From positions 186,001 to 250,000 of the IMG/VR virus record IMGVR_UViG_3300024262_006558: a stretch of DNA of 64,000 bases. One strand, given 5' to 3'. A model generated the notes under the pieces. The model had not been told where the DNA came from, did not search any database, and was given only the letters and a program-made list of their open reading frames with translations. The position numbers were made by a program, and so were the translations under genes. Shown piece by piece: positions 44,277-64,000 of the stretch (the stretch's first letter is position 1; each line of letters starts with the position of its first letter).

Positions 44277-44327
44277 AATCCTTTGTTTTGATTCACCAAT
44301 ATATACCACGAGTGGGATATTATGTAC

Positions 44328-45095
44328 TTACTCATAGAAGTTCAATTTATTTTGTAGTGCTACTAACATGTTAATATCTTGTATTGGGGTCATTGTATTT
44401 ACGCTCTCTATTTCTTTTGTTGATATAGGTGTTTTGTTTCTTTTTATATCTACAATCATAATAGTATTATCTAAAAATGAATGAGATATATTTATGACGT
44501 CTATACGTTTGTCTTTAACTATTATTGTGTTACCAATAAATTCATAGACAGGTAGGATTCCAGTATTTACTTTTACAGTATTTTTATTCTTATAAAAGTT
44601 CTTTTTAAATCTTGTTAAGTTTGGCACGTTACAAGTCGCTCTTTTACATAAGTGAATTGATTTTTTAACGTTATCTAGTGAAATATCTTTTACAAAGACG
44701 TTTCTTAGTGGCATATCATTTACATATATGGCTATTTTGTCTCCATACATAAAAGCGTTTACAGTAACGTTATTAAAAACAAATGTAGTGTGTTTAGATT
44801 CTCTATGTATGTTTATGCGTTCGATTTGTTTTTTACTTCTATATTCTATTTCAGAATCAATTTTACTTTTTACATATTCTAGGCTTGTTCCGTCAACAGG
44901 TTTAGGTGAATAGCATCCTGTTTGAAATGTGTAGTTTTTATATTTACCAACACTAACGGAATAATAAGGGTTGTCGATTGAGTTAAGCTTTAACCCATCC
45001 TTGTCAGTTATAGACACGCTATTGGAGATAGGCTCATCGTTCATAAAAATATCTACACCTCTATATGTTTCAATTACTGTTTTTTGATTAATCAT
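44328..45095 (-). CDS. Hypothetical protein behind repeat A
   Basis: 255 aa; its stop abuts the next repeat copy. Confidence 0.6.
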   Translation of the reverse strand: MINQKTVIETYRGVDIFMNDEPISNSVSITDKDGLKLNSIDNPYYSVSVGKYKNYTFQTGCYSPKPVDGTSLEYVKSKIDSEIEYRSKKQIERINIHRESKHTTFVFNNVTVNAFMYGDKIAIYVNDMPLRNVFVKDISLDNVKKSIHLCKRATCNVPNLTRFKKNFYKNKNTVKVNTGILPVYEFIGNTIIVKDKRIDVINISHSFLDNTIMIVDIKRNKTPISTKEIESVNTMTPIQDINMLVALQNKLNFYE

Positions 45096-45472
45096 AATGC
45101 GTTTCTTTTTGATTCGATAATATATACGTTGGAGGGGATATTGTGTACTAAATAAGAAAAACCCTTAGTATGGGAGTACTAAGGGTTTTATAGCGAAAAT
45201 GAAAACAAAACTTTAGAAGTGATATCTAATTATAATTTTGAAGAAATAAGTTAATCAAGTATCTACGAAGTTTTATCATTTCATTTATATATACACTAAC
45301 GAAGTAATTTTAAATTTGTTGCCACATATGAAACATTTATATTTCTCTTAGTAATTCCGCACCTTCGTATACCATGATATTCAATACACTATAGGGTTGG
45401 AGCTTGTATCCTGGAAAGTACATAATGTCCCCGTGGTCGTATATATTGTTGAATCAAAAAAACATACATATT

Positions 45473-45853
45473 ATGAAAGCTCACATGGAAATCGCAAATA
45501 CAATTTTATCACAGTTAAAAACTGGACAACAAAGCAAAATTAGAATGATGCGTTGGGGTGCAACTGGTTTTATGGGAATGAAGAAAGAAGGCAAGCTTGG
45601 CACGCTTAGATTTAAAGTGAACGGTTTGAAGTTCAAAGGATTTGTTTATATCTCTTTGAATGGCTCAGATACTTACGACATTGAATTTGTGAAAGTTAAG
45701 AGACGTAAAGATGAAGAGCTTAGCAAATTATACGGAAGAACTAAGTTTGAAGAGTACACTGAAACGGTGAAAGAGATGAACGGTATCTATTGCGACCAAA
45801 TGAATGAGTTGATAGATGAATATGTAGAGAAACAAAGTAACTATGCGTTTTAG
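45473..45853 (+). CDS. Hypothetical phage protein
   Basis: ATG after repeat A; IANTILSQL..FKVNG..SDTYDIEF..IYCDQM. Confidence 0.65.
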   Translation: MKAHMEIANTILSQLKTGQQSKIRMMRWGATGFMGMKKEGKLGTLRFKVNGLKFKGFVYISLNGSDTYDIEFVKVKRRKDEELSKLYGRTKFEEYTETVKEMNGIYCDQMNELIDEYVEKQSNYAF

Positions 45854-45905
45854 TACATAGTTTCCCCTTGGGGGTATATATTATTGAATTTTAAAAGAAG
45901 ATATT

Positions 45906-46124
45906 ATGTCACTTATAAAAAATGCAAAGTATAAAGATAACACCACTTACAAGTATGGGACACTTACTTATACGGGTAAAAAGAAAGATATTAATTATGG
46001 CATGGGTTCTTTTGAAATGTCTCATTGTTTTGATTACGTAGATAACAACTTCCCAAAAGAGTTTGGAGTAACAAAGAAATGGCTTACAGAATCTTATATT
46101 AAAAATCATTTAACAGCTCTTTAG
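45906..46124 (+). CDS. Hypothetical protein
   Basis: Behind repeat A. Confidence 0.6.
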   Translation: MSLIKNAKYKDNTTYKYGTLTYTGKKKDINYGMGSFEMSHCFDYVDNNFPKEFGVTKKWLTESYIKNHLTAL

Positions 46125-46289
46125 TTAGAGCTGTTTTTTTATTTGTGTATCTCTGAATTTTTCCGCAACTGCGTAAACCTTATCAGATACAGAGGGAGAG
46201 ATTGAGGTCACAAAAGCTGAAAAGTAAACTTTCCTATAAGTACATAGTTTCCCCCTCGTGGTATATATTGGTGAATCAAATTTAAAGAC

Positions 46290-46529
46290 ATGAAAACCAT
46301 TAAAGATTATAAAGTAGATTTTAAAGTAGCCAATAGTGATTATGGAACTTTAACTATACCAAAAGGAACAAGTGTGACAAATCAAACAGCAATGGGAATT
46401 GATAAAAACTATCATTTTGTTAATGATTTTTCATGGGTGAAAAAACATGAATGCGGTACTATACAACATGGCTTATTGCATGATTTAAAACACTATGGAA
46501 TTAATGTCCCAAAAGAATATGTGTCTTAG
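46290..46529 (+). CDS. Hypothetical protein
   Basis: Behind repeat A; stop overlaps the next copy. Confidence 0.6.
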   Translation: MKTIKDYKVDFKVANSDYGTLTIPKGTSVTNQTAMGIDKNYHFVNDFSWVKKHECGTIQHGLLHDLKHYGINVPKEYVS

Positions 46530-46797
46530 TACATAGTTTCCCCCTCGTGGTATATATTGGTGAATCAAATTTAAAGACATGAATCAATTACTTAGTACTC
46601 CGAACAAAAGCAAACAAGCATCAAAGGTTTTACAGTTGATGGATAGAGATTATAGTTATGAAGAATCTTTAGCAATCATATTGAATGCTGACAAAAGGCT
46701 TAGTAAGTCGAAGTTAGAAACTGAATTAAATCTTTACATATAAAGTACACAGTTTCCCCTTGGGGGTATATATTGGTGAATCAAAACAAAAAAAGTT

Positions 46798-47130
46798 ATG
46801 TGTTATTATTCAGATGAATTAAAAAGAATTAGTACAAAGTCAGAATTTCCAGCTCAAGTAAAATTATCTGATGCGGAAGGGAATAAGACAAAATTCTTAA
46901 GTCTCAATAAAGAGAGTGCAAAGGTTTTAGTTGAGTGGTTAACTACTAACTTTTTAGAAGCACCCGCAACTTTAAACGAAGTTATTGAAGGTGGTAAAAT
47001 GGTTGCCGAATATGAAACGCAGGATTTTGATGATACAGAAATGTATTTAGTAGAAGTCTATCATTTTGAGGATTCTCTTTATTATATCGCAAATGGCGCA
47101 ATAATCAGAAGAGGCCCTATAAAGAAATAA
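46798..47130 (+). CDS. Hypothetical protein
   Basis: Behind repeat A. Confidence 0.6.
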   Translation: MCYYSDELKRISTKSEFPAQVKLSDAEGNKTKFLSLNKESAKVLVEWLTTNFLEAPATLNEVIEGGKMVAEYETQDFDDTEMYLVEVYHFEDSLYYIANGAIIRRGPIKK

Positions 47131-47519
47131 AGTACACAGTTTCCCCTTGGGGGTATATATTATCGAATCAAAAAAACATTAAGATTATGAAGACTAATAA
47201 AAGACAAGAGAGAAGAGACGTTTCAGAAAAGAAAAAAGAAACATTCAATCAAAGTGCTAAAAAAGGGATGACTCCTTACAAGAGCAGAAAGCCTAAGCAC
47301 AAGAATGAAGATTTATTTGCTCATCTTGATGCTGTCTTAAAATACTAAAAGTACCATAGCGATAGTTCAAATAAAGAGGTTTCTAACCTCTTTTTTTTGT
47401 TTACTTGCTTCTCTGGTTTTTTCCGCACATTCGTAAACCTTGATGTCCCCCTATGCTGTTTGACCAAAAGTACATAGTTTCCCCGTCACCGTATATATTA
47501 GCGAATCAAAACAAACATT

Positions 47520-48419
47520 ATGAAAACGGCTGATATTTACCAAAAAGTTACAGATAGAATTTTAGACCTAATAGATAATGGCGGTAAATTGCCATGGGAA
47601 AAGCCATGGGACTATAATGGTCAGCTACCTTGTAACTATGCAAGTAAGAAGCCTTACAGAGGTATTAATTTAATTATGACTGCATTCGATGAATTTAATA
47701 GTCCTTTTTACTTAACTGCAAATGAGATCAAAAAGCGTAAAGGCTCTTGGAGCGGTAAGGGTACTTTAATAGTATTTTGGAAGTTCTTAAAATTCAAAGA
47801 CAAAGATGATGAAAACAAGTTAAAGACTGTACCAATGTTAAAACATTACTATGTTTGGAATGAAGAACAAATAACGGGTATAGAGTTCAAGCATAACGAT
47901 AAGCATGAAATAAAAGATTTCGGCACAATCAATGAAGTAGAAGACATTTTTGCAAATATGCCTAATAAGCCTTCTATCATTCATGAAGAACAAGACAGAG
48001 CTTGTTATTCTCCAATTGCTGATACTGTAATGATGCCTTTAAAAGGTCAGTTCAAATGTTTAGAGTCTTATTACAAAACATTTGCGCATGAATTAATTCA
48101 TTCTACTGGTCATGAAGACAGATTAAATAGAGATGGTGTTGCAAACTTTGACAAATTCGGTTCACATCAATATTCTAAAGAAGAACTAGTTGCTGAAATG
48201 GGTGCATCTTTTATTATGGGTATGGCTGGATTAGAGTCAACTCAAGAAAATTCAGCATCTTATATTAAAAGCTGGAGAAACAAAATAGCTGGAGATAATA
48301 AGTTAATTATTCAAGCTGCTGGACAGGCTCAAAAAGCGGTGGACTATGTTTTGGGAACTTACAAGGATTACGCTGAAATTGAGAAGGAAAACGATAATTC
48401 AAAAGCAATGGCGGTTTAA
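47520..48419 (+). CDS. ardC: ArdC-like antirestriction ssDNA-binding protein with zincin domain
   Basis: IYQKVTDRI..PWEKPW..YRGIN; AHELIHSTGH..RLNR; YSKEELVAEMGA; NSASYIKSW; AAGQAQKAVDY. Confidence 0.85.
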   Translation: MKTADIYQKVTDRILDLIDNGGKLPWEKPWDYNGQLPCNYASKKPYRGINLIMTAFDEFNSPFYLTANEIKKRKGSWSGKGTLIVFWKFLKFKDKDDENKLKTVPMLKHYYVWNEEQITGIEFKHNDKHEIKDFGTINEVEDIFANMPNKPSIIHEEQDRACYSPIADTVMMPLKGQFKCLESYYKTFAHELIHSTGHEDRLNRDGVANFDKFGSHQYSKEELVAEMGASFIMGMAGLESTQENSASYIKSWRNKIAGDNKLIIQAAGQAQKAVDYVLGTYKDYAEIEKENDNSKAMAV

Positions 48420-48573
48420 TAAAAAGGGTGGATTATTTTCCACCTTTTTTATTGGGGAGAGTTCTCTGAAAAATTCCGCATTATCGTAAACCTTAACCTC
48501 GTAATACATACCAATAACAAAGTACATAATATCCCCTTCGCCGTATATATTGATGAATCTAAACAAAATCATC

Positions 48574-48971: not shown

Positions 48972-49226
48972 ATGAAAAAGACTTATGCAATCATCGCAAT
49001 TTATCTATTAGCTGGTCTTGCAGGACACGCAGGAAACAGCACTGAGGTTACTGAGTTTATGACTCAAACGGTTAACGTCAACGGTCATGGGGTGAACAGT
49101 TCACTTCAAATGTGGCAAAGCTTATTAGCATTAGCTACACCCGTTATCCTCATAGGAGGTGCAACGCTAATCGGTTACGTAAAGTATCGTAATGCAGAAG
49201 CAAAAAAAGCTACACAATTAGGTTGA
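48972..49226 (+). CDS. Small membrane protein
   Basis: Signal/TM segment plus a second TM; behind repeat A. Confidence 0.6.
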   Translation: MKKTYAIIAIYLLAGLAGHAGNSTEVTEFMTQTVNVNGHGVNSSLQMWQSLLALATPVILIGGATLIGYVKYRNAEAKKATQLG

Positions 49227-49519
49227 AACCCTTCGGGGTTTTCACATTCAGACAAGGAAGGCGAATATGGCTGAATGCGTTAAGTCCGCGAAGTACGGCT
49301 AAGTATAACATAAGAAAAGAAATAAACTTAATTGAAAGCATAAAAAACCCATCTATTAAATTAGATGGGTTTTTTATTAGGGAGAGTTCTCTAAGTATTT
49401 CCGCAATATCGTAAACCTTAATCTCATGATACATATCCAGAAAAGCTGAAAAGTAAACTTTCCTATAAGTACATAGTTTCCCCATTACCGTATATATTGG
49501 TGAATCAGAATTTAAAGAG

Positions 49520-49996
49520 ATGAAAAAGATAGCATTAGTAGACGTATTCAATGGAGAGGGATATTCAGACCCTACGGTCAAAGTAGTAGAAGATTGTAGT
49601 CAAGAAATGTTTGACTCAATAGAGGAAATGCGTACTTCTTATGGGGGAGATGACTTCGAGCAAGTGGAGGGAGAGTTAGAAGATTATTCTGATACCGTTC
49701 ACATGGCTTTTAATGGGATAGGTCATTCAGAAGATGATAACGGAGCAATTCATGTTATTGAAATTCCTAAAGGGAGAGTTTTACTTTTGTTATTGCAACC
49801 GTGTGAATGTGAGGTTAAAGTTTTTGGAACGTATGATTCAAAAGAAGAAGCTGAAATTGCTATGAAAGAAGAGGTTTATAAGGATTCAAACGGATATGAT
49901 TCTGATGAAGTAGAAGAATGGGAAGAAGAAGAAATTACTGATAGCTTTTCAGCACATGGAAAAGATAGTTTTGATTTTTATAAAATCATTAGTTAG
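49520..49996 (+). CDS. Acidic hypothetical protein
   Basis: Very D/E-rich; behind repeat A. Confidence 0.65.
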   Translation: MKKIALVDVFNGEGYSDPTVKVVEDCSQEMFDSIEEMRTSYGGDDFEQVEGELEDYSDTVHMAFNGIGHSEDDNGAIHVIEIPKGRVLLLLLQPCECEVKVFGTYDSKEEAEIAMKEEVYKDSNGYDSDEVEEWEEEEITDSFSAHGKDSFDFYKIIS

Positions 49997-50046
49997 TACA
50001 TAGTTTCCCCATCACCGTATATATTGTTGAATCAAAAATTAAGAAC

Positions 50047-50289
50047 ATGGAATTATTAAATGCAAAAGAAATGGCAAATAAAGTAGTTATTGACGAAAGT
50101 TTTCTTAAAGAAATAACTAAAAAAATTAATGAAAACGCTAAAAGTGGACGAATAGCTATTAACTGCGGTTGGAGATGGTGTTCCGCACAAGCAAAGTCTC
50201 ACGCTATTAACGTTTTAAAAAGTAATGGATATGGTATTGGATTTAGTACAAATTGTCATGGTGTGGACAGGCTGATAGTGACTTGGTAA
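50047..50289 (+). CDS. Hypothetical protein
   Basis: Behind repeat A. Confidence 0.6.
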   Translation: MELLNAKEMANKVVIDESFLKEITKKINENAKSGRIAINCGWRWCSAQAKSHAINVLKSNGYGIGFSTNCHGVDRLIVTW

Positions 50290-50427
50290 CAATATATAAC
50301 TTAAAAATAAAGATAACTCTATAGGGTTATCTTTATTTTAGTTATCGGTACATAATATCCCCATCACCGTATATATTGGTGAATCGGACAAACAGATAGT
50401 TTGCCAGTAAACGAAACAAAATCAGTT

Positions 50428-50739: not shown

Positions 50740-50822
50740 GTACATAGTCTCCCCATCACCGTATATATTGTTGAATCGGACAAACAACAAGTTTGCCAGT
50801 AAACGAAAAACAAACAAACATT

Positions 50823-51035: not shown

Positions 51036-51212
51036 TTGTTTGATTCAAAGATTCGGGGACTTGTTCCCCTTTCTTTTTGTTTGTGCATCTCTGAGTTTTT
51101 CCGCATCTTCGTAAACCTAATCTTTTGTTAACCAGATCCAGGAAAGCTGATCTTTCCCATAAGTACATAATATCCCCATGGTCGTATATATTACCGAATC
51201 AAAAGTAAAAAC

Positions 51213-51545
51213 ATGAACTATTCAAAAAACAATCGTTTAATAGCAGAATTTATGCAAGCGCCATTTTATTCTCCAAATGATTTTGATTTATATAGCACTA
51301 GCGGTTTAAATCATATCTTTAGAGATGTTGAAAGTGATGATGCTAATGCTCAACACTTCTTTAGAGGTGAACAAATGTTATTTCATAATTCATGGGACTG
51401 GTTAATTCCTGTAATACAAAAAATTAAAGAGATTGATTCTTCTATTGGTATAGAGCAAAGGCTTAATCCTTTTACTTACAACTTAGATTCTGTTTATGCT
51501 GGAGTTATTGAGTTCATTAAATCTTATAACCATAAAAGTACATAA
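51213..51545 (+). CDS. Hypothetical phage protein
   Basis: NNRLIAEFM..FHNSWDWLIPVIQKI; the stop is supplied by the next repeat A. Confidence 0.65.
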   Translation: MNYSKNNRLIAEFMQAPFYSPNDFDLYSTSGLNHIFRDVESDDANAQHFFRGEQMLFHNSWDWLIPVIQKIKEIDSSIGIEQRLNPFTYNLDSVYAGVIEFIKSYNHKST

Positions 51546-51590
51546 TTTCCCCCGTACCGTATATATTGGTGAATTTAAACAAAGCATATT

Positions 51591-52163: not shown

Positions 52164-52371
52164 AAAGAATTGTGTTTGATTCAAGAACTAAGGGGCGAAA
52201 GTCCCTTTTTTCTTTTTCTTGTTTCTCTGAGTTTTTCCGCATTTTCGTATACCTAGGTTTTAAATTCAAGTTTCCATTTTGGCAACAAAAAGCAAAAAAT
52301 TTCGTTATAGTAAAAGTACATAGTTTCCCCACCACCGTATATATTGGTGAATCAAAAAACAAATAGAAGTT

Positions 52372-52920: not shown

Positions 52921-53069
52921 AAACAAAAAAGGAACTTTAATTAGTTCCTTTTTTTTGCTTGTTGTTTCTCTGAATTTTTCCGCAACTGCGTAAACCTAGT
53001 CCACTCCATAGGGAGAGGTGCAGATCACCATTAGTACATAATCTCCCCACCACCGTATATATTGTCGAG

Positions 53070-53333
53070 ATGAAAAGAAAACTATTCAAATACAAGTATA
53101 CTCGAAGAACTTTCTCTAAGGATGGAAGTTTTTGCACGGAGGAACATACTAGGGAGAGCGACTTTAGCTTAAAAGCTTTTGAGGGAGAGGTTGCTGACTG
53201 GCATCGACAAGGGCAAATGATGAAGCACAGAGACACTCTAAGCGAGATTCAAGGCTATGACTACTTCATCACTAAGGAGCAGGGAGAGTTTAACGAGAGA
53301 GCCTATAAAGTTAGAGTACTAGTAAGTACATAG
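53070..53333 (+). CDS. Hypothetical protein
   Basis: ATG directly after repeat A; stop lies inside the next copy. Confidence 0.55.
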   Translation: MKRKLFKYKYTRRTFSKDGSFCTEEHTRESDFSLKAFEGEVADWHRQGQMMKHRDTLSEIQGYDYFITKEQGEFNERAYKVRVLVST

Positions 53334-53377
53334 TCTCCCCATGGTCGTATATATTGGTGAATCTAAATAAAGGAATC

Positions 53378-53545: not shown

Positions 53546-53868
53546 AAAACATTATAATCATAGGAGCTGTAAGCGTTAGTCAATCAGTCCATATAATGAA
53601 TGTATTGGCTGGTATGGATACGGATATTTCTATTGTCGTAAACGCTAAAGGCGGCATGATGCAAAACTTCATGGATATGGAGAGAGGAACGAGTCTTTCA
53701 TCTCTTAAGTTTGATGTCACAAAAGATTATTGTTTAGAAGATATTCCCGAATTTGAATATGAAAAGATTGGAGACCGTAAACAGTTAACCTCAAAGCAGC
53801 GTAAAAATAGAAAAGCTAAAAGAAGGCAAGTAAAGCAGTCAAGGAATTTTATGCACAAAAGTACATAG
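53533..53868 (+). CDS. Hypothetical protein with basic C-terminus
   Basis: Stop lies inside the next repeat A. Confidence 0.55.
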   Translation: MSFMKNIIIIGAVSVSQSVHIMNVLAGMDTDISIVVNAKGGMMQNFMDMERGTSLSSLKFDVTKDYCLEDIPEFEYEKIGDRKQLTSKQRKNRKAKRRQVKQSRNFMHKST

Positions 53869-53914
53869 TCTCCCCATCACCGTATATATTAGTGAATCGA
53901 AAAACAAGACACAA

Positions 53915-54259: not shown

Positions 54260-54261
54260 TT

Positions 54262-54729: not shown

Positions 54730-54959
54730 GGAGAGTTATGGAAAGATTAGGCTACTATGCAAAAGATGTTGAAGACAATTTGTTTCAATTCAAATGGGGA
54801 GAGGATGATAAATTCTATATCTTCAAGAATCAAAAGTATCATTTAGATAATCCTAATAACTATGTGATATTAGAGGTAGGTTTCTTTACGGCTGATAATC
54901 CAAGTACATAATATCCCCATCACCGTATATATTGTTGAATCAAAAAACAAACAAACATT

Positions 54960-55355
54960 ATGGAAAAGCATTTAGTAACAATTGAGTTCAGATATTCAAG
55001 TGCTCCCGATAAATTCGATTCTACTAGTCAAGACAAAGTAGTGACAATAGGGGTTTATGACGATTTTGATGAAGCTTGTAAAGAGGGAAACAAAGCCCTT
55101 GAATTACTTGAGAGTAAATTTGACATTCATACTTTCCCTCAAGGAAATAAGGCTAAAAAAGAAAGATTTAGTAAAAATGGCGGTTGCTTTGGAAGTAAGA
55201 ACACCTTAGTTTCAAACTTGGCTTATTTGAAAACACCATTTCAGTTTTTTGCAAAGATAGAAACATTAAAGCTTGATTCGTTAGAGGATGCAGTTAATGA
55301 AGTAGTTGATTCTGTAAAAGGATATAGAAAATATAAAGCCTCAATTGAGGATTAG
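54960..55355 (+). CDS. Hypothetical protein
   Basis: Behind repeat A. Confidence 0.6.
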   Translation: MEKHLVTIEFRYSSAPDKFDSTSQDKVVTIGVYDDFDEACKEGNKALELLESKFDIHTFPQGNKAKKERFSKNGGCFGSKNTLVSNLAYLKTPFQFFAKIETLKLDSLEDAVNEVVDSVKGYRKYKASIED

Positions 55356-55407
55356 TACATAGTTTCCCCATCACCGTATATATTTTTGAATAGAAACAAA
55401 AGCAATC

Positions 55408-57244: not shown

Positions 57245-57441
57245 TTTTTATTGTTTATAACACGAAAATAAAGATAAGCGTTAAGCGACCCGAAGGGTTA
57301 TCTTTTATTTTCTGTTATGATCTGATAGTCCAAGTACATAGTCTCCCCATCACCGTATATATTGGTGATGGGGAAACAGAAAAATGGTAATGGGTTATAC
57401 ATTGTGTTATAGCCTTTTAATTAACAATTAAATAAACAAAA

Positions 57442-58130: not shown

Positions 58131-58805
58131 AAAACTTTATAACAAAAGCAAATGAGTTGAAAGTTAGTTATTCAACACTATACAAACTAATTTTAGGAAA
58201 AGAAATTGAGTGTATATTAGTTTGTGGTAGGTATTATTTTAATTAAGAGCGAGGGCAAAAATATTTAATTATGGTATTAGAAGCACTAAACTTGAATATT
58301 AGCACTAATGTAGCACTTGCATACAACACGAAAATAAAGATAAGCGTTAAGCGACCCGAAGGGTTATCTTTTATTTTCTGTTATGATCTGATAGTCCAAG
58401 TACATAGTCTCCCCATCACCGTATATATTGGTGATGGGGAAACAGAAAAATGGTAAAGCGTTATATGGATTGTATCTATATAACTAACGTGGGGAAATAA
58501 ATAGACGACTGATTTGAGTACTTGAAAAAGTTTAAAAGATTCCTAAGATGTTGGAATATCATAAAAAACTCTGTTAACTGTTGGGCAGTCGAGCCAATTG
58601 CGTCTATAACGTAGTATTGTTGAATACAATCTGTCCCAATTACCTAGGAAGTCTGATTAATTTCAGGCTTTCTTTTTTTATATTTGTTTCTCTGACTTTT
58701 TCCGCAACTGCGTAAACCGATCGATTATATTCCCTGGAGGAACCAATCAACAAAGTACATAATATCCCCATCACCGTATATATTGGTGAATCTAAACTTA
58801 AAGAC

Positions 58806-59228
58806 ATGAAAGACTTATTTGAACATTACGAAGAAATGCCTAGCCACCTTACCGCTATTTGCGATAAGTGGACAGAGAAGCATTTGGATGAAGGTTTAAG
58901 TTACATTGACTGTGCAGACTTCCTAAAAGAATTGGAAGCGATTGGATATACTTTCGAGTATGGTTTGGATGCAGAGCCGTATGGATTAGTTGAAATTTCT
59001 AAAAAGAAAGTATTTGTTTACTTGGCAAAACTTGGAGTTGTGGTAAGTACAGATGAAAATGGAGAAACGGAGGTTCAAAGAATTGACAGTCCCGAAGAGT
59101 TTAGAGATGACAACGAATTGTTTTTGGATTTCACTCCTCCATTATTGGAGAGCGACCAAGAAGCAAAAGACATTTATAATAGCATCACGCATTCAATGTG
59201 GATTCATTTAACTGGAGACAAAACGTAA
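58806..59228 (+). CDS. Hypothetical protein
   Basis: Behind repeat A. Confidence 0.6.
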   Translation: MKDLFEHYEEMPSHLTAICDKWTEKHLDEGLSYIDCADFLKELEAIGYTFEYGLDAEPYGLVEISKKKVFVYLAKLGVVVSTDENGETEVQRIDSPEEFRDDNELFLDFTPPLLESDQEAKDIYNSITHSMWIHLTGDKT

Positions 59229-59283
59229 AAGTACATAATATCCCCGCCACCGTATATATTGGTGAATCTAAACAAAGGAAATT

Positions 59284-59781
59284 ATGAAAACTATAAAAGT
59301 AAGACACTACAACGGAACGGAATTACAAGTTAGTCTTGGAGATGTTATAATAGGCGAAGGTACTATGGGAACATCAAAAGGTAGAGATGTAACTGGGGTA
59401 GTTCACAAAATAGAAGTAGGTAACATCACGTTGAAAAGAGGTAACACTTTACACTTGGTAGACCACACGACTTTAAAAGTTGCTCAAATGAGAGAAAACA
59501 ACTTTGAAGTGTATACTAAGAATCCGAAAACGGGTGAAGAAGGTTGGGAAATTGAAATGGTATCGGTAATAGCATATAGTACATATCACGCTAGGCAGAT
59601 ATTGAAGAAGTGGAATTTGTTTGACGAAGTTATCTTGTTTAATTTCTCTGCTCCACTCGCAGAATCTAACGAAGCAGGATTGTACACTTTAAATGAAACG
59701 ATGAAAGCAGTAGAAGGTACAATTCTTGAAACGGATTACCACAACAAATATTATAAACCATTAGCACACATTAAAGCATAA
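59284..59781 (+). CDS. Hypothetical protein
   Basis: Behind repeat A. Confidence 0.6.
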   Translation: MKTIKVRHYNGTELQVSLGDVIIGEGTMGTSKGRDVTGVVHKIEVGNITLKRGNTLHLVDHTTLKVAQMRENNFEVYTKNPKTGEEGWEIEMVSVIAYSTYHARQILKKWNLFDEVILFNFSAPLAESNEAGLYTLNETMKAVEGTILETDYHNKYYKPLAHIKA

Positions 59782-59955
59782 GTGTTTGATTCAGAAATTT
59801 AGAGGGCGAGAGTCCTCTATTTTTCGTTATTGATTTCTCTGAGTTTTTCCGCAGCTGCGTAAACCATACGATCGGAATCCCTGGAGGATCCGATCATGCA
59901 ACAAAGTACATAGTTTCCCCGTTAGTGTATATATTACTGAATCAAAAGAATTATA

Positions 59956-60762
59956 ATGAATATCCCAAAAGAACAATTAAAGCGAATAGTGGACTTACTT
60001 AATAGCGATGTCTTTGCGGTAACGTTTAGACTGGAAACGGGTAATAAGTTAGAAACGGCAGAACAAGCCGTTGACGCGCTCTTTGATGGGGTAGTCACTT
60101 TAGAGGATATGTTCTTTTGTAGATTGGACGAGTCATTTAGACACGCAACCCAAGAGGTAAATGATACATGGGAGGATAATATGGAAATGTTTGCTCCAGA
60201 AAACTATCTTCCAAGTGAAAAAACATTACCCGAAGGTGGAGCGTGGATAAAGGTTAGGCATGAAACTGGATACCAATTACATTTTGCAAAGGTTTCAAAT
60301 AGAAAAAGAAGATTTGCCGAAGAGATAAAGAAAGTTTCTCAAACTCTCAATAAAGAGATGGAAAAAGTAAGAGAGTTCAATTGTTCTATGGACAAAGCTG
60401 AAGCTCTCCACAAAAAGATGGACATTCTTTTTGTTTATCATGAGATTGATATTCCTTTATATGAAGTTAGATATCAGAGAACTAAAACAAAAGTCGAATA
60501 TTTAAACCCATTTCAATATGAGATTTGCAGCGATGAAGATTTGCAAATGATATTGGATGCGGTTAGAAAGAAAACCTTTGGCGTTAAGATGAGAAATCTT
60601 TACACGTCAGTAAACAAGGACCAAATCTTTTATTTGAGAAGCAGAGGTATAAGCGAGCAAGAAGCGATGATTATGGCTAACTTGAAACAATGTTACTTTG
60701 ATGTTGATATTATGGGCATGAACGAGGTTTTTAATGAGTCATTCAGACTTGTAAAAGCATAA
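59956..60762 (+). CDS. Hypothetical protein with SufB/SufD C-terminal-like motif
   Basis: VNKDQIFYLRSRGISEQEAM. Confidence 0.6.
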   Translation: MNIPKEQLKRIVDLLNSDVFAVTFRLETGNKLETAEQAVDALFDGVVTLEDMFFCRLDESFRHATQEVNDTWEDNMEMFAPENYLPSEKTLPEGGAWIKVRHETGYQLHFAKVSNRKRRFAEEIKKVSQTLNKEMEKVREFNCSMDKAEALHKKMDILFVYHEIDIPLYEVRYQRTKTKVEYLNPFQYEICSDEDLQMILDAVRKKTFGVKMRNLYTSVNKDQIFYLRSRGISEQEAMIMANLKQCYFDVDIMGMNEVFNESFRLVKA

Positions 60763-60826
60763 CTCTCCCCATAGTACATAATATCCCCCGTACCGTATAT
60801 ATTGGTGAATCTAAACAAACAAAGTC

Positions 60827-61156
60827 ATGAATATTATAGTTTTCACATTAAACACTAAAGCGAAATCAGAGTACAGAAATGGAAATGGTGAAATTGATCG
60901 CAATGAATATCCAGTTCATATCAAATTAGATACTGATTATTCACATGGTTTTATTTTGAAAATTGAAGACACTCCAGGCTCTTGGCATATGTCTACTCTT
61001 ATGGGTGATCGTTATGGTAATGCATACAATGAAGACAATCAAGTTTTAAGTATTCATGGTACGGAGTGGATGTGCGTTAACATATTTGATTTAATCAAGG
61101 AAGCGAATGAAACGCTAGAAAAAATGGATATGAAAGTAATTCCCGACAATAGATAA
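60827..61156 (+). CDS. Hypothetical protein
   Basis: Behind repeat A. Confidence 0.6.
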   Translation: MNIIVFTLNTKAKSEYRNGNGEIDRNEYPVHIKLDTDYSHGFILKIEDTPGSWHMSTLMGDRYGNAYNEDNQVLSIHGTEWMCVNIFDLIKEANETLEKMDMKVIPDNR

Positions 61157-61214
61157 CGGAAGTACATAATATCCCCACCACCGTATATATTGGTGAATCT
61201 AAACAAAACTCATT

Positions 61215-61730
61215 ATGGCAACAGATTATAAAAAATTAGCACTAGAAGCATTAAGTTTCATTAGAGATAACACCGACAACGAAGCTTTTCAAAGCACCGT
61301 TGATGGAACGGAGATTGACATAGATAAAACTATCCAAGAACTTACTCCTATCTTGCCAGATGTTGACTTTACATTATCTCAAATAGTCGAAGGCAAAAGA
61401 CAACTTAATCTAGCATCTCAAATTGTTAAACAAAACATGAAACTTCTTATCATGCACTACATGAAAGAGGCGGGCTTAGAAGAAATAATCATTGAAGATT
61501 TAGATGTTATCCACAGTGATGCAGGAATTTCAGCTGGAGATTATATGGATTCGGTTACTAGAGTCCTAGCAAATGGAGATTACTTCTATACTCACAATGG
61601 CGAAAGAAGCGAAGAAACGGAAGCAGGCGGAATTGAAAGCTTGCCAGTAAATTCTTTAGACAAATTATTAAAAAGATTACAGGATTATAATGGTAGTAAT
61701 TTAGCATTAAGCACAACGCTTACTGTATGA
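61215..61730 (+). CDS. Hypothetical protein
   Basis: Behind repeat A; followed by an attC-like site. Confidence 0.6.
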   Translation: MATDYKKLALEALSFIRDNTDNEAFQSTVDGTEIDIDKTIQELTPILPDVDFTLSQIVEGKRQLNLASQIVKQNMKLLIMHYMKEAGLEEIIIEDLDVIHSDAGISAGDYMDSVTRVLANGDYFYTHNGERSEETEAGGIESLPVNSLDKLLKRLQDYNGSNLALSTTLTV

Positions 61731-61853
61731 TTAGAATTTGAAACTAAATCTTAGTTGTTGCTAACGTACCGTATAAGAAGCGTTGAGAGGTACGAACAAT
61801 GATTTTTATACATTGTTATATGCTTTTATTAATAACAATTAAAATTAAACAAG

Positions 61854-62102
61854 ATGAAAAAAGTAACCCATTGCATAGTATATAGATTACACAAAGACAA
61901 TTCACCAACTGTAATAGATTGTTCTTCGGAAAAGGAACAAGGTGAACAGTTATCTAAAATAATAAAAGAGGGGTATAAAAATGCGTATAAAGCAACACCT
62001 GAACAAGCTACGAAAGTCTTGAATGATTACGGAAAACAATTTGAACCTAAGCCATTAACACAACAGGAAAGATGGGATAATTGGGCTATAGGTAAAGGGT
62101 AA
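61854..62102 (+). CDS. Cassette-borne hypothetical protein
   Basis: Between GTTATATGC and GCATATAAC. Confidence 0.6.
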   Translation: MKKVTHCIVYRLHKDNSPTVIDCSSEKEQGEQLSKIIKEGYKNAYKATPEQATKVLNDYGKQFEPKPLTQQERWDNWAIGKG

Positions 62103-62196
62103 TTGCATATAACGAATTGTATATGAGGCGTGAGGAACGAATGACTGCATATACGCTGTTATATGCTTTTTTATTAACTAATTAAAACAGATTAAA

Positions 62197-62520
62197 ATGA
62201 TTATAGGATTAATACAAGGAAATAGAGTTGAATTAGGAGAAACTGATAACGGATATGTATACAAAAACAGTTTTGCGTTTGACAAAAAGACTGATGAAAT
62301 ATGTTATATACCAGAGTTAGGGATTGAGGGAGATATAATTACAGAAGACACTTCTGTTTATAGATATTCCGACTTTTTAGAAATAGCTACTGATTATGTA
62401 AAAAGAAATGGGTTAAGTAATACACCTCAAGATATGGCTGAACAATTATTTGAATGTGTTGATTGGCAACATCCAAGTACATTACTTGATGAATGGGAAA
62501 TTCATTTAGAAGATGAGTAA
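62197..62520 (+). CDS. Cassette-borne hypothetical phage protein
   Basis: ICYIPE..LFECVDWQHPSTL; between GTTATATGC and GCATATAAC. Confidence 0.6.
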   Translation: MIIGLIQGNRVELGETDNGYVYKNSFAFDKKTDEICYIPELGIEGDIITEDTSVYRYSDFLEIATDYVKRNGLSNTPQDMAEQLFECVDWQHPSTLLDEWEIHLEDE

Positions 62521-62604
62521 TTGCATATAACGGTTAGTATATGAAATGTGGAGCAAAGCGGAATTTTTTATATACCGTGTTATGCTCTTTTAAATTAGAT
62601 AATT

Positions 62605-62760
62605 ATGATAAGTTTTAAATATTACAAGAATTACGGAATTGAATACTGCTTTGGTAGTGCAACTGTACAGGGATTTATGGGTAGACCTCTTAAAACTTTT
62701 ACAGGTGGATGTATAAAGGCAGTAGAAAAAGCAGAAAAGTATATAGATAGCCTTAATTGA
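62605..62760 (+). CDS. Cassette-borne 51-aa protein (not in ORF track)
   Basis: MISFKYYKNYGIEYCFG...YIDSLN*; between GTTATGCTC and GAGCATAAC. Confidence 0.55.
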   Translation: MISFKYYKNYGIEYCFGSATVQGFMGRPLKTFTGGCIKAVEKAEKYIDSLN

Positions 62761-62858
62761 GCATAACGGTTAGCGTATAGTGACGTGAAACGAAGTGAAA
62801 TGCACTTATACGCCTTGTTGTGGTGAGTACGGGTTATTAACCAATAAATTAAATTGAA

Positions 62859-63080
62859 ATGATACAAGACAAATTAGAAAATCAAATCCATAACGTAATT
62901 ATGGAAACGGCAAGAGAACCTAAACTTATTGTAATGCACCCACAAACATGGGTTGACCTTGCAAAAGAAGTTACTGGCAAAGATGGGATGACAATAAATA
63001 GATACGACCCAAATATGAAGTACAGAGGGATTAAGGTGATTAGAAGTTTGGATTTGTTGGAGGGTGAGTTTGAAATGTAG
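62859..63080 (+). CDS. Cassette-borne hypothetical protein
   Basis: Between GTTGTGGTGAGTAC and GTATTCACCACAAC. Confidence 0.6.
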   Translation: MIQDKLENQIHNVIMETAREPKLIVMHPQTWVDLAKEVTGKDGMTINRYDPNMKYRGIKVIRSLDLLEGEFEM

Positions 63081-63205
63081 TATTCACCACAACACGAAAA
63101 TAAAGATAAGCGTTAAGCGACCCGATAGGGTTATCTTTTATTTTCTGTTATCGGTACATAATATCCCCCGTACCGTATATATTGGTGAACTTAAATAAAA
63201 ACATC

Positions 63206-63472
63206 ATGGCAAAGCAAAACTTTAAAAAGAGATATAGAGATTTAGAGGTACAAGTATTCGCAACCCTTAGGGATGCGATTGAGAATAGTGAGTTTAAATC
63301 TGAACACTTAAGCGAAAAAGCTATTAAGGTAAATGTGTTTGATTATACAGAATTATCAATACTTAATGACCGCTTGGTATTATTAGACCATAAAGGTTTC
63401 CATTATTCAATTTATTCTGATTGTACGTTGGAAGATTTAATTGACATCATTAACAAATTGGAAGATGAATAA
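63206..63472 (+). CDS. Hypothetical protein
   Basis: Behind repeat A. Confidence 0.6.
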   Translation: MAKQNFKKRYRDLEVQVFATLRDAIENSEFKSEHLSEKAIKVNVFDYTELSILNDRLVLLDHKGFHYSIYSDCTLEDLIDIINKLEDE

Positions 63473-64000
63473 ATATTCAAATACCGTAAAAATGTTAGGT
63501 GTAGATACTAGAAGCTCATTTCTTTTTGGGGATGCGTGCGACAATTTAATTAAGTGTAGCAGTAAAGAAATCCAACAAGAAGCAAAGGACGAAATTAGTC
63601 AGATACTAATCAAGCTAAAGCCCGTTGAAGGCGGTATAACTATTCAAATGGTTGACGCGCTTTTACATGGTATGATTACGGAACATGCACACAAAGATAC
63701 TTTGCCTTTAAAAGGGTTTAGTATAAAAGTACATAATTCCCCCGAAGCCGTATATATTGGTGAATCAAAAGAAAAGAATATGCACACTATAAGAAAAAGA
63801 ACGCCAGTATTTGAAACCGATGACTTTCAAGAAGTATTCAATACAGATTCTTACAATGTATTTGTGAAACCTGAATTTGAATCTAAATTCAAAAGCTCTT
63901 TATCTTATCCTGATATCGTACTAAGAAAGTATGACCACGAAAATGGAATGACTACAGTAGTGGCGGACTATCAAAACAAAATAGGAAGCAAGATGCTTGC
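63465..64000 (+). CDS. Partial ORF reading in frame through repeat A into the ORF starting at 63780
   Basis: No stop from ATG 63465 to the window end; in-frame ATG at 63780. Confidence 0.5.
   Translation, partial: MNKYSNTVKMLGVDTRSSFLFGDACDNLIKCSSKEIQQEAKDEISQILIKLKPVEGGITIQMVDALLHGMITEHAHKDTLPLKGFSIKVHNSPEAVYIGESKEKNMHTIRKRTPVFETDDFQEVFNTDSYNVFVKPEFESKFKSSLSYPDIVLRKYDHENGMTTVVADYQNKIGSKML

What the first reader, a model, noticed from the sequence alone, without database searches (positions are those of the whole stretch)
44290..63766. 32-copy promoter-like repeat that divides 20 kb into one-gene modules
Seen: GTACAYARTWTCCCC-N6-7-GTATATATT-NNY-GAAT precedes nearly every non-cassette gene and is oriented with the gene (2 copies on minus, 30 on plus). 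Spacing between GTAC and SGTATA is a fixed 16 nt, and the start codon typically follows 10-20 nt later. Some copies extend into longer identical blocks (about 46239-46293 = 46528-46582; 46214-46254 is close to 49442-49483). Established analogy: mobile promoter cassettes (PeSL elements) shuffle genes in T4-type phages. Inference: a strong early phage promoter with -35/-10 architecture like ECF-sigma promoters, which also serves as a recombination hub for accessory genes such as ardC.
Basis: partly seen in the sequence, partly recalled or inferred. Interest (0 to 1): 0.75.

Follow-up and report, generated by a model that had tools for sequence, protein, structure and literature searches.

The report
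Repeated phage promoter cassette array
A giant T4-like phage, probably of a Bacteroidota host, places the same ~50-base promoter-plus-leader in front of almost every gene across a 43 kb region of small accessory genes, and related phages carry the same modules in a different order, which is a new variant of the promoter cassettes already known from T4-type phages.

Summary
The window holds 32 copies (0.5 expected by chance). The 388.6 kb genome holds 57, all inside one 43 kb block that runs 24 kb past the window. The unit is about 50 nt: AA-GTACATARTWTCCCC-N6-GTATATATT-GGTGAATC plus an A-rich leader, with the ATG 20-26 nt after GTATATATT. Flanks are unconserved, the 56 downstream ORFs are not paralogs, and upstream stop codons often abut or overlap the repeat. 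The best reading is a class-specific promoter plus 5' leader for accessory and anti-defence genes (ArdC is confirmed). It matches neither E. coli sigma-70 nor Bacteroidota sigma-A consensus and is absent from 185,579 species genomes. I infer that host core RNA polymerase reads it under a phage-specified factor. The phage encodes two RpoD-like sigmas and one ECF sigma and no detectable RNA polymerase. Which factor reads it is unresolved, and no transcript data exist. Three relatives carry lineage-specific versions with a conserved -10-side core and a divergent upstream box. Shared genes are ordered differently in them, and homology blocks begin at the repeat. Neighbouring copies share subtypes, and module-sized indels are flanked by direct copies. 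This fits the PeSL model of T4-type phages. New here are the non-host consensus, a second 30-nt box (19 copies) and the single contiguous array.

The parts
44290..44327 (-). main repeat copy 1 (38-nt core), drives ORF 44049-44276 (75 aa)
45111..45148 (-). main repeat copy 2, drives ORF 44328-45095 (255 aa). This promoter-plus-gene module is absent from relative L021
45418..45455 (+). main repeat copy 3, ORF 45473-45853
45853..45890 (+). main repeat copy 4, ORF 45906-46124. The upstream stop codon TAG uses G1 of the repeat
46240..46277 (+). main repeat copy 5, ORF 46290-46529
46529..46566 (+). main repeat copy 6, ORF 46579-46743. A 55-nt stretch is identical to copy 5
46745..46782 (+). main repeat copy 7, ORF 46798-47130
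47132..47169 (+). main repeat copy 8, ORF 47187-47348. An ortholog is present in L021
47470..47507 (+). main repeat copy 9, drives the ArdC-like gene
47520..48419 (+). ArdC-type anti-restriction gene (ArdcN plus zincin peptidase domains), the anchor gene shared with relatives L021, L122 and L125
48522..48559 (+). main repeat copy 10, ORF ending at 48894 (likely start 48574). An ortholog is present in L021
48902..48939 (+). main repeat copy 11, ORF 48972-49226
49469..49506 (+). main repeat copy 12, ORF 49520-49996
49996..50033 (+). main repeat copy 13, ORF 50047-50289
50348..50385 (+). main repeat copy 14 with a longer shared leader, ORF 50428-50739
50740..50777 (+). main repeat copy 15 with a longer shared leader, ORF 50823-51035
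51163..51200 (+). main repeat copy 16, ORF 51213-51545
51538..51575 (+). main repeat copy 17, ORF 51591-52163. The upstream stop codon lies inside the repeat (T6-A7-A8)
52316..52353 (+). main repeat copy 18, ORF 52372-52920. An ortholog is present in L125
53034..53071 (+). main repeat copy 19, atypical, with the ATG 6 nt after the downstream box, ORF 53070-53333
53326..53363 (+). main repeat copy 20, ORF 53378-53545
53861..53898 (+). main repeat copy 21, ORF 53915-54259 and following ORFs
54904..54941 (+). main repeat copy 22, ORF 54960-55355
55355..55392 (+). main repeat copy 23, ORF 55408-55599, followed by a run of 'cassette' ORFs without the repeat
57256..57399 (+). 144-nt composite unit (terminator hairpin, main repeat copy 24 at 57334, then a GGTGATGGGG arm). 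Left member of a direct repeat
58322..58465 (+). 144-nt composite unit (main repeat copy 25 at 58400, no ORF behind it). Right member of the direct repeat, 141 of 144 positions identical
58755..58792 (+). main repeat copy 26, ORF 58806-59228
59231..59268 (+). main repeat copy 27, ORF 59284-59781
59906..59943 (+). main repeat copy 28, ORF 59956-60762
60774..60811 (+). main repeat copy 29, ORF 60827-61156
61162..61199 (+). main repeat copy 30, ORF 61215-61730 and four further ORFs
63154..63191 (+). main repeat copy 31, ORF 63206-63472. An ortholog is present in L021
63729..63766 (+). main repeat copy 32, ORF starting at 63780 and running off the window (328 aa, weak DNA-methylase-like hits)
45344..45373 (+). 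box 2 (TCTCTGAGTTTTTCCGCA-N4-CGTAWACC), copy 1
46150..46179 (+). box 2 copy, preceded by terminator hairpin 46112-46135
47410..47439 (+). box 2 copy, preceded by terminator hairpin 47373-47393
48463..48492 (+). box 2 copy, preceded by hairpin 48427-48444
49388..49417 (+). box 2 copy, preceded by 16-bp hairpin 49340-49377
51088..51117 (+). box 2 copy, preceded by terminator hairpin 51055-51069
52224..52253 (+). box 2 copy, preceded by terminator hairpin 52190-52207
52967..52996 (+). box 2 copy, preceded by terminator hairpin 52925-52954
58689..58718 (+). box 2 copy, preceded by terminator hairpin 58646-58673
59836..59865 (+). box 2 copy, preceded by terminator hairpin 59800-59819
29581..30444 (+). 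phage RpoD-like sigma factor gene (287 aa; regions 1.2, 2, 3 and 4), one of three candidate readers. It lies outside the array

Best explanation
The repeat is a promoter fused to a short 5' leader. It is the dedicated promoter of one transcription class of a 388.6 kb T4-like jumbo phage. It has an upstream box (GTACATARTWTCCCC, about -36 to -22), a fixed 6-bp GC-rich gap, a -10-type box ((C)GTATATATT containing TATATT), and a conserved start region (GGTGAATC) followed by an A-rich leader without a Shine-Dalgarno sequence, with the ATG 20-26 nt after the -10 box. Each copy starts transcription of one small accessory or anti-defence gene, occasionally of a few. Genes are packed so tightly that the previous stop codon often lies in or against the next promoter. 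Where a terminator hairpin is present, a second conserved 30-nt box lies between the terminator and the promoter. I infer that this box is a second promoter class or a regulator site. Because the sequence matches neither the E. coli sigma-70 nor the Bacteroidota sigma-A consensus, and occurs in no sequenced cellular genome, I also infer that host core RNA polymerase reads it when directed by a phage-specified factor. The likeliest factor is one of the phage's own sigma factors (two RpoD-like, one ECF). As a by-product, the 57 near-identical copies act as substrates for homologous recombination. This homogenises neighbouring copies and lets promoter-plus-gene modules be inserted, deleted and reordered, as described for PeSL elements of T4-type phages. 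The repeat, its geometry, its confinement to one block, its lineage-specific relatives and the module reshuffling are shown.
For: Copy numbers: 32 copies against 0.52 expected in the window. There are 57 copies in the genome, all in a 43 kb block, 55 on the gene strand and 2 divergent at the left edge. The repeat gives the most over-represented 11-mers in the genome. Geometry: the position matrix shows conservation from -2 to about +47 with unconserved flanks and a semi-variable N6. The ATG lies 20-26 nt downstream in most copies. The 56 downstream ORFs have no paralogs among themselves. Stop codons abut or overlap the repeat in about half of the copies. Terminator-like hairpins number 26 against 8.3 expected, while E. 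coli-type promoters are not enriched, at 67 against 88.9. Context: the phage has a T4-type portal and capsid, no T7-like RNA polymerase hit and no PHROG RNA polymerase among its large proteins, and three sigma genes. Only 4% of long ORFs have a Shine-Dalgarno-like sequence, and there is an A peak at -12. A different motif, CTATTTATA(A), precedes genes in the structural half of the genome. The adjacent small-gene region to the left is operon-like and has no repeats. Gene content is ArdC plus ORFans. Relatives: L021 has 7 copies reading GTATACATT, L122 has 9 copies of TTTGGATTWTCCCAC-N6-CGTTATATAAGTGAATC, and L125 has a further variant. TATAT stays in register across lineages when anchored on GTGAATC. 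Outside the N6, orthologous promoters are 84-91% identical in three of four modules, against 64-70% for the neighbouring genes. Shuffling: gene order differs in L021 and L125. blastn homology blocks start 1-4 nt upstream of a repeat. An extra minus-strand module is flanked by two copies. A 144-nt direct repeat flanks a 0.9 kb insert. Adjacent N6 sequences are identical 12 times against 2.7 expected. Three independent 2025 runs hold the repeat with unlike flanks. Literature: PeSL (PMC2839356 and PMC4122927). T4-like jumbo phages lack an RNA polymerase and encode sigma factors (PMC7824862).
Against: There is no transcript or 5'-end data of any kind, because only DNA runs hold the sequence. The ECF sigma gene has its own distinct GGAAAC-N17-CGTATA promoter. 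Neither RpoD-like sigma gene is linked to the repeat. The protein-DNA co-fold was not run by the tool. The 15-nt upstream box is longer than a sigma region 4 site, so an extra activator may be involved, but no AsiA was found and MotA's DNA-binding domain gave only a sub-threshold hit. The breakpoint evidence is partly trivial, because the repeat fills almost all of the intergenic space. The joints seen in the source sample are assembly breaks at repeats, not recombinants. All relatives are short contigs.
Confidence: 0.75

Rival explanations
1. The repeat is an ECF-type promoter read specifically by the phage's own 192-212 aa ECF sigma, which is encoded at the far end of the same block. On this view the array is that sigma's regulon.
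For: AAGTAC-N16-CGTATA has ECF geometry. 'CGT' before TATA is conserved in all four lineages. ECF sigmas require near-consensus promoters with 16-18 bp spacers (PMC7776599), which fits the near-invariance of the copies. The ECF sigma gene lies inside the block, and its best family matches are SigW, SigY and RpoE.
Against: The ECF gene is preceded by a canonical GGAAAC-N17-CGTATA, whose -35 differs from GTACA. The repeat has no AAC-type -35. Conservation of TWTCCCC in the spacer and of GGTGAATC downstream is not explained by ECF recognition. If the sigma is made from within the block it cannot start the block's own transcription without another source.
Confidence: 0.25
2. The repeat is a host-sigma-A early promoter with a T4-style extended consensus. 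It is read directly by unmodified host RNA polymerase holoenzyme, like T4 early promoters and classical PeSLs.
For: The phage is T4-like and the architecture resembles PeSLs. TATATTGG matches 5 of 6 specified bases of the Bacteroidota -7 motif TAnnTTTG (consensus from my own knowledge). The L122 version carries TTTG about 21 nt upstream of TATAT.
Against: This phage has no TTTG at the -33 position. The E. coli-type match is only about 8 of 12. The motif is not found as a family in 185,579 species genomes. The host has not been identified.
Confidence: 0.2
3. The conserved block acts mainly at the RNA level within read-through polycistronic transcripts, as a processing site, translational operator or enhancer, and not as a start site.
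For: Many copies have no terminator upstream, so read-through RNA would contain them. The most conserved part across lineages is GTGAATCAAAA next to the start codon.
Against: No stable structure forms: the mean DNA folding energy of positions 8-45 is -1.3 kcal/mol, and there is no covariation around the -10 box (P = 0.34). The bipartite layout with a fixed 6-nt gap and a TATAT box is typical of a promoter. The two divergent copies at the left edge sit back to back, as divergent promoters do.
Confidence: 0.07
4. The repeat is a site for a site-specific recombinase, comparable to an integron attC or a lox site, and that recombinase moves the gene cassettes.
For: Two copies carry a perfect 10-bp inverted repeat around the 9-bp GTATATATT. 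The modules are clearly mobile between relatives.
Against: Only 2 of 57 copies have the full inverted repeat and there is no covariation. The record encodes no tyrosine or serine recombinase. The fixed distance and orientation relative to start codons are not explained by this model.
Confidence: 0.03

Closest known systems
PeSL elements (promoter-early stem-loop cassettes) of T4-type phages such as RB49, phi1, PST and nt-1 (PMC2839356, PMC4122927)
   Same: The genome is T4-like. A conserved composite intergenic motif runs from the upstream stop codon through two promoter boxes and a leader to the start codon. It is associated with small ORFan genes in a plastic region. Terminator hairpins accompany a subset of copies. 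The motifs sit at indel, replacement and reordering boundaries between relatives. Direct copies flank module-sized inserts.
   Different: The promoter is not the host sigma-70 consensus. The leader has no Shine-Dalgarno sequence. A stem-loop is present in only a minority of copies and is not conserved inside the promoter. There are 57 copies in a single 43 kb block instead of scattered hyperplastic regions. A second 30-nt box is present. The phage carries three sigma genes of its own. Mini-circles and promoter activity are untested.
T4 early and middle promoters (extended sigma-70 early consensus; MotA box plus -10 with AsiA/MotA sigma appropriation)
   Same: Dozens of near-identical promoters drive small pre-replicative genes. 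The long conserved upstream box replacing a normal -35 recalls the MotA box. The tandem arrangement of box 2 and the main repeat recalls tandem early and middle promoters.
   Different: No AsiA was detected, and MotA's DNA-binding domain gives only a 15-bit sub-threshold hit. The sequences are unrelated. A phage sigma, not an appropriator, is the more likely reader.
ECF sigma promoters (for example the SigW type, TGAAAC-N16-CGTATA)
   Same: Both are bipartite with a 16-nt spacing to a CGTATA box and are near-invariant. An ECF sigma is encoded nearby.
   Different: The repeat has no AAC-type -35. It has extra conserved blocks in the spacer and at the start site. The ECF gene's own promoter differs from the repeat.
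Phage-specific promoter sets read by phage-encoded polymerases or sigma factors (T7 class promoters; SPO1 gp28 and gp33/34 promoters)
   Same: A long, nearly invariant promoter sequence that is absent from the host defines one temporal gene class.
   Different: No phage RNA polymerase was detected. The layout is bipartite and sigma-like, not a contiguous T7-type promoter. There is one promoter per gene, not one per operon.

Membership tests
PeSL (T4-type promoter-terminator cassette) | Resides in a T4-like myovirus genome | tested here: met
   Portal_T4 (Gp20) at 1.5e-66 and Gp23 capsid at 5.2e-64
PeSL (T4-type promoter-terminator cassette) | Repeated intergenic motif containing the host sigma-70 early promoter consensus | tested here: not met
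   The motif is repeated and intergenic, but it matches the E. coli consensus at only about 8 of 12. It lacks the Bacteroidota -33 TTTG and is absent from cellular genomes
PeSL (T4-type promoter-terminator cassette) | Adjacent or embedded stable stem-loop acting as a terminator or attenuator | tested here: inconclusive
   Terminator hairpins precede about 20 of 57 copies. Only 2 copies have a strong internal hairpin, and there is no covariation
PeSL (T4-type promoter-terminator cassette) | Preferential association with ORFans in a plastic region | tested here: met
   Of 20 larger proteins, 14 have no Pfam hit and 3 have only sub-threshold hits. There are no paralogs. All copies lie in one block
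PeSL (T4-type promoter-terminator cassette) | Lies at indel, replacement or reordering boundaries between related phages | tested here: met
   L021 and L125 carry shared modules in a different order. Homology blocks start 1-4 nt before the repeat. An extra module is flanked by two copies
PeSL (T4-type promoter-terminator cassette) | Promoter activity and mini-circle formation shown experimentally | not testable with these tools
   The phage is uncultured and no RNA run holds the sequence
ECF sigma-dependent promoter | Bipartite motif with a 16-18 bp spacer and a CGT-type -10 box | tested here: met
   AAGTAC-N16-CGTATA is present in 29 plus-strand window copies. Spacer rule from PMC7776599
ECF sigma-dependent promoter | -35 box of the GGAAC/GAAAC (AAC) type recognised by sigma region 4 | tested here: not met
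   The -35 position reads GTACA in all 57 copies. The AAC rule is from my own knowledge
ECF sigma-dependent promoter | The cognate ECF sigma is present and its own gene carries the same promoter (autoregulation) | tested here: not met
   An ECF sigma is present, but its upstream region carries GGAAAC-N17-CGTATA, a pattern unique in the genome
T4 middle promoter (MotA/AsiA sigma appropriation) | AsiA and MotA homologs are encoded | tested here: not met
   AsiA gave no hit. MotCF gave 15.4 bits, below its cut-off of 25
Site-specific recombination site (attC or lox type) | Inverted-repeat arms around a core, and a cognate recombinase | tested here: not met
   Full arms occur in 2 of 57 copies. 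No Phage_integrase or Resolvase hit

The most novel reading that the evidence does not exclude
The repeat is the cognate promoter of one of the phage's own RpoD-like sigma factors (or of its ECF sigma). That would make it the first defined promoter set for the sigma factors that T4-like jumbo phages carry in place of an RNA polymerase. The lineage-specific upstream boxes (GTACATA, TTTGGAT, TCTACC) would then record co-evolution of sigma region 4 with its promoters, giving naturally orthogonal sigma-promoter pairs for Bacteroidota. A bolder version is that the sigma is made late and delivered with the DNA, so that the array is transcribed immediately after infection.
Probability: 0.4. Interest if true: 0.65.

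Novelty: new variant of a known kind. Interest (0 to 1): 0.5.

Why it matters
T4-like jumbo phages are known to encode sigma factors in place of an RNA polymerase, but what those sigmas read is not described in the literature I searched. This array offers 57 natural copies of a probable phage-specific promoter, versions from three diverged lineages, and three candidate sigma factors. The sigma-promoter assignment is therefore directly testable in vitro. The finding extends the PeSL model, in which promoter repeats drive modular gene shuffling, from enterobacterial and vibrio T4-type phages to a giant uncultured phage with Bacteroidota-type gene expression signals. It shows that the mechanism does not depend on a host-consensus promoter. 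It also marks out the phage's accessory and anti-defence gene pool (ArdC and dozens of ORFans) as single-gene units that can be exchanged.

Tried and rejected
1. Megablast of the region against 50,697 phage records found nothing.
2. A strict motif scan of IMG/VR found nothing, and a relaxed scan gave two unrelated hits at 46% GC.
3. The scan of 185,579 species genomes gave one hit in a Crocinitomicaceae MAG with no homology. I estimate about 2 such hits by chance for a 19.5-base pattern in 596 Gb.
4. RpoD-like sigma homologs in IMG/VR are all 36-49% identical, so they do not point to a sister genome.
5. Rfam and tRNA scans found nothing behind the two ORF-less copies.
6. Read laying on the source sample showed only contig breaks at the repeats, which is an assembly effect and not recombination.
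8. A stem-loop around the -10 box was rejected on the covariation test.
9. GAAAC/GGAAC-N15-18-CGTA is not enriched, so the ECF-type promoter has no wider regulon in the phage.
10. T4 late TATAAATA and Bacteroidota TAnnTTTG are not enriched genome-wide.
11. An ESM Atlas look at the 1165-aa protein with a weak sigma region-2 hit gave only sub-threshold leads.
12. One related-loci run failed because I gave a wrong reading frame.

Full report
**Observation.** The pattern GTACAYARTWTCCCC, allowing up to 2 mismatches, occurs 32 times in the window, between 44313 and 63743. Two copies are on the minus strand and 30 on the plus strand. Dinucleotide shuffles give a mean of 0.52. Every copy continues with six variable bases, then GTATATATT, three semi-variable bases, GAAYC and an A-rich leader.

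**The array in the whole genome.** The window lies in a single 388,594-bp contig at 33.9% GC.
- Genome-wide there are 57 copies. All lie between genome 230,327 and 273,517. The two leftmost are divergent and the remaining 55 are on the plus strand.
- The array is therefore a 43 kb block, of which the window shows the first 19.5 kb.
- The repeat supplies the most over-represented 11-mers in the genome.
- All matches on the 494 kb JGI contig that contains this phage fall in the same block.

**Anatomy.**
- The position matrix of the 57 copies shows conservation starting abruptly at -2 and fading by about +47. The flanks are unconserved, and the internal N6 is GC-rich and only semi-variable.
- The distance from the end of GTATATATT to the ATG is 20-26 nt in about 45 copies.
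- The 56 downstream ORFs have no detectable paralogs among themselves, so the repeat is not a by-product of gene duplication.
- Packing is extreme. In about half of the plus-strand copies the previous ORF's stop codon lies within -18 to +7 of the repeat. In eight cases the stop is TAG ending on G1, and in seven it is T6-A7-R8 inside the repeat.
- By a crude ORF call, 38 of 55 units contain one gene of at least 60 aa, 5 contain only shorter ORFs or none, 11 contain 2-4 genes, and the last contains 12.
- Terminator-like hairpins are enriched, at 26 against 8.3 expected. E. coli-type promoters are not, at 67 against 88.9 expected.

**A composite version and a second box.** About 15 copies sit in longer intergenic gaps of 115-150 nt that share a common layout. 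The order is:
- a variable GC-rich hairpin with a T-run;
- a second conserved 30-nt box, TCTCTGAGTTTTTCCGCA-N4-CGTAWACC;
- 29-66 variable bases, often containing a small palindrome;
- the main repeat.

Box 2 has 19 copies, all on the plus strand and all inside the same block. Four of them lie in tandem at the right edge of the block, at 274.1-274.6 kb. The variable distance between box 2 and the main repeat argues that they are independent elements. I read box 2 as a second promoter class or a regulator site, and this is an inference.

Four other places share a distinctive terminator, AAATAAAGATAA...TTATCTTTTATTTT. Three of them lie directly upstream of a main repeat, and the fourth is elsewhere in the genome. 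Two of these composites, at window 57256-57399 and 58322-58465, form a 144-nt direct repeat with 141 of 144 positions identical. It flanks about 0.9 kb. In these two copies CCCCATCACC and GGTGATGGGG form a perfect inverted repeat around GTATATATT.

A stem around the -10 box is not a general feature. There is no covariation (P = 0.34), and only 2 copies form a strong hairpin.

**The genome and its transcription genes.**
- The phage is T4-like. It has a Gp20 portal, which contains an intein, and a Gp23 capsid protein. The nearest portals are from Flavobacterium and Microcystis T4-like phages.
- Only 4% of 275 long ORFs have a Shine-Dalgarno-like sequence, and upstream regions show an A peak at -12. 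A lipoprotein in the block resembles Riemerella and Porphyromonas families. From my own knowledge, this pattern points to a Bacteroidota host. The host itself is unknown.
- No T7-like RNA polymerase was found, and no PHROG RNA polymerase family matches the eight large proteins searched, six of which matched no family. I did not scan for multisubunit RNA polymerase families.
- The genome encodes two RpoD-like sigmas of 285 and 287 aa, only 37% identical to each other, and one ECF sigma. One RpoD-like gene is in the window at 29581-30444. The ECF gene lies inside the block, at 267.9-268.5 kb.
- This fits the published picture that T4-like ('group 2') jumbo phages lack an RNA polymerase and carry RpoD-like and minimal sigmas (PMC7824862).
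- AsiA is absent, and MotA's C-terminal domain gives only a 15-bit sub-threshold hit.

**Other promoter classes.**
- Outside the block, CTATTTATA(A) is the most enriched upstream motif. It sits about 12-25 nt before start codons in the structural half of the genome. It resembles T4 late promoters in position and AT-rich character.
- The small genes just left of the block overlap by 4 nt in operon style and have no repeats.
- The main repeat is therefore one class-specific signal among several.

**What reads the repeat.** This remains unresolved. Two sigma-type readings fit the geometry:
- TACATA-N17-TATATT, suited to an RpoD-like sigma;
- AAGTAC-N16-CGTATA, suited to an ECF sigma.

The repeat matches the E. 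coli consensus at only about 8 of 12 positions. It lacks the Bacteroidota -33 TTTG, although TATATTGG matches 5 of 6 specified bases of TAnnTTTG (consensus from my own knowledge). It occurs only once among 185,579 species genomes, which is at chance level by my estimate.

The ECF gene carries a textbook GGAAAC-N17-CGTATA promoter of its own. That pattern occurs nowhere else in the genome, and related patterns are not enriched. ECF sigmas need near-consensus promoters with 16-18 bp spacers, and about half autoregulate (PMC7776599). The first point favours the ECF reading and the second counts against it.

The 15-nt upstream box is longer than a typical sigma region 4 site, so an additional factor is possible. 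I therefore commit to the following: host core RNA polymerase reads the repeat under a phage-specified factor, most likely one of the three sigmas. My rough split is RpoD-like 0.4, ECF 0.25, host sigma with or without an activator 0.2, and other 0.15.

**Gene content.** ArdC-type anti-restriction is confirmed at 47520-48419, with ArdcN and zincin peptidase domains. Beyond the window there are a weak DNA-methylase-like protein and a GP88-family protein. Of the 20 larger proteins tested, 14 have no Pfam hit and three have only sub-threshold hits. This is typical of pre-replicative host-takeover genes. It is my only basis for calling the class 'early'.

**Relatives.** Three lineages besides this phage carry versions of the element.

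| Lineage | Source | Copies | Form of the element |
|---|---|---|---|
| L021 | 4.8 kb contig from another JGI sample | 7 main, 5 box 2 | same layout, with GTATACATT in 6 of 7 copies |
| L122 | 6.8 kb contig; ArdC 55% identical; GC 29% | 9 | TTTGGATTWTCCCAC-N6-CGTTATATAAGTGAATCAAAA |
| L125 | 2.5 kb contig; ArdC 57% identical | 4 | TCTACCTTTT-N2-CTATCCCTTTCGTTATATAA |

- Anchored on GTGAATC, the TATAT of L122 falls in register with TATAT in this phage.
- The CGT-TATA core, the TCCC tract and the start region are conserved across lineages, while the upstream box is lineage-specific.
- Outside the N6, orthologous promoters of this phage and L021 are 84-91% identical in three of four modules, against 64-70% for the adjacent genes.
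- Three independent 2025 runs hold the repeat at 80-95% identity, and 68-91% of what was laid runs on into unlike sequence.

**Recombination.**
- L021 order: h233187, h249206, h234553, two novel ORFs, ArdC. In this phage the order is 233187, ArdC, 234553, with 249206 lying 15 kb further on.
- L125 order: h238372, ArdC, two novel ORFs, h231473. In this phage 231473 lies upstream of ArdC and 238372 downstream.
- L122 shares only ArdC with this phage.
- blastn homology blocks with L021 begin 1-4 nt upstream of a repeat.
- This phage has an 821-bp promoter-plus-gene module on the minus strand, flanked by two copies, where L021 has a single copy.
- Neighbouring copies share subtypes. Adjacent N6 sequences are identical 12 times against 2.7 expected (P below 2e-4), and positions 8-11 match 24 times against 14.6 expected.
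- In L021 two adjacent promoters are identical to each other although their orthologs here differ. Promoter subtype therefore follows position and not gene ancestry, which is the signature of local gene conversion.
- The record encodes no tyrosine or serine recombinase. Homologous recombination between repeats, as shown for PeSLs (PMC2839356), is therefore the likely mechanism.

A caveat applies. The repeat fills nearly all of the intergenic space, so any gene-level rearrangement would have breakpoints near a repeat. The joints seen in the source sample are assembly breaks and not recombinants.

**Comparison and verdict.** The closest known system is the PeSL, the promoter-terminator cassette of T4-type phages.
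- Met: T4-like genome, repeated composite intergenic motif, association with ORFans, location at rearrangement boundaries.
- Not met: the promoter is not the host sigma-70 consensus.
- Inconclusive: the stem-loop is present in only a minority of copies.
- Untestable here: promoter activity and mini-circle formation.

The element works like a PeSL but is a distinct variant. It has a non-host consensus, a leader without a Shine-Dalgarno sequence, a second box, a single contiguous 57-copy array, and phage-encoded sigmas as probable readers. I rate it a new variant of a known kind, with interest about 0.5.

Noticed in passing
window 55600-58200 and probably 61730-63100: A second, more degenerate inter-gene repeat of about 100 nt (for example GCTAACGTTTAGT...CATTGTTGT) separates small ORFs that lack the main repeat. 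Two exact copies of TGCTAACGTTTAGT lie at 55961 and 56922.
   Followed up: partly
L020:7020-7960 (genome 377,020-377,960, outside the window): A CRISPR-like array of at least 14 direct repeats of about 36 nt (GTTGTGATTTCCTTTCAAAATAATGGTATACATAC) at a 66-nt period, with one spacer present twice. The cas genes and the subtype were not examined.
   Followed up: no
L020:3617-6738 (genome 373.6-376.7 kb): A cluster of 10 tRNA genes (Leu x3, Thr x2, Cys, Phe x2, His x2) next to the CRISPR-like array. No tRNA genes were found elsewhere in the genome.
   Followed up: no
L014:14100-16180 (genome 274.1-276.2 kb): About 1.8 kb of largely non-coding, visibly C-rich sequence lies at the strand switch that ends the block. 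It holds four tandem box 2 copies and a degenerate main repeat that lacks the -10 box. It may be an origin, a terminus or a regulatory hub.
   Followed up: partly
L033:1381-2019 (genome 267,877-268,515): The ECF-type sigma gene inside the block is preceded by a unique, textbook GGAAAC-N17-CGTATA promoter. A Bacteroidota-style lipoprotein gene lies just upstream.
   Followed up: yes
genome-wide, e.g. L001:11878-11886 (-), L009:14156-14164 (+) and L010:4301-4309 (+): CTATTTATA(A) has 24 copies. Most lie 12-25 nt upstream of start codons in the structural half of the genome, often after a T-run. It is a candidate late-promoter class analogous to the T4 late promoter TATAAATA.
   Followed up: partly
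L001:518-4015: A 1165-aa protein gives a weak Sigma70 region 2 hit (residues 267-300, 22.9 bits). ESM Atlas gave only sub-threshold sigma-like leads. It may be a giant protein containing a sigma domain.
   Followed up: partly
L003:12456-16097 (-): The T4-type portal gene is interrupted by an intein with an HNH endonuclease domain.
   Followed up: no
window 50386-50430 and 50778-50825, and L013:10848-10890: Three repeat copies share a longer 5' leader (GAATCGGACAAAC...AGTTTGCCAGTAAACGAAA) that contains a small CAAAC/GTTTG hairpin, which places the ATG 50-53 nt after the -10 box.
   Followed up: no
window 2500-3300 (within ORF 1841-3916) and L004:18960-19280: The coding repeat CACGCTGAAGG occurs many times at a 42-nt period in two large genes. 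These look like fibre-type repeat proteins.
   Followed up: no
L014:11300-20000 and L015:1-2450 (genome 271.3-282.4 kb): Just after the last repeat copies lies a family of diverged tandem coding repeats or paralogous genes (AGATGGTCCAGC, 29 copies; self-similarity 70-85%). It spans the strand switch.
   Followed up: no
whole record: IMG/VR labels the 388.6 kb record a 'provirus' cut from a 494 kb contig. However, no integrase or resolvase is encoded and the genome is T4-like, so the label may be a trimming artefact and the true genome may be larger.
   Followed up: partly
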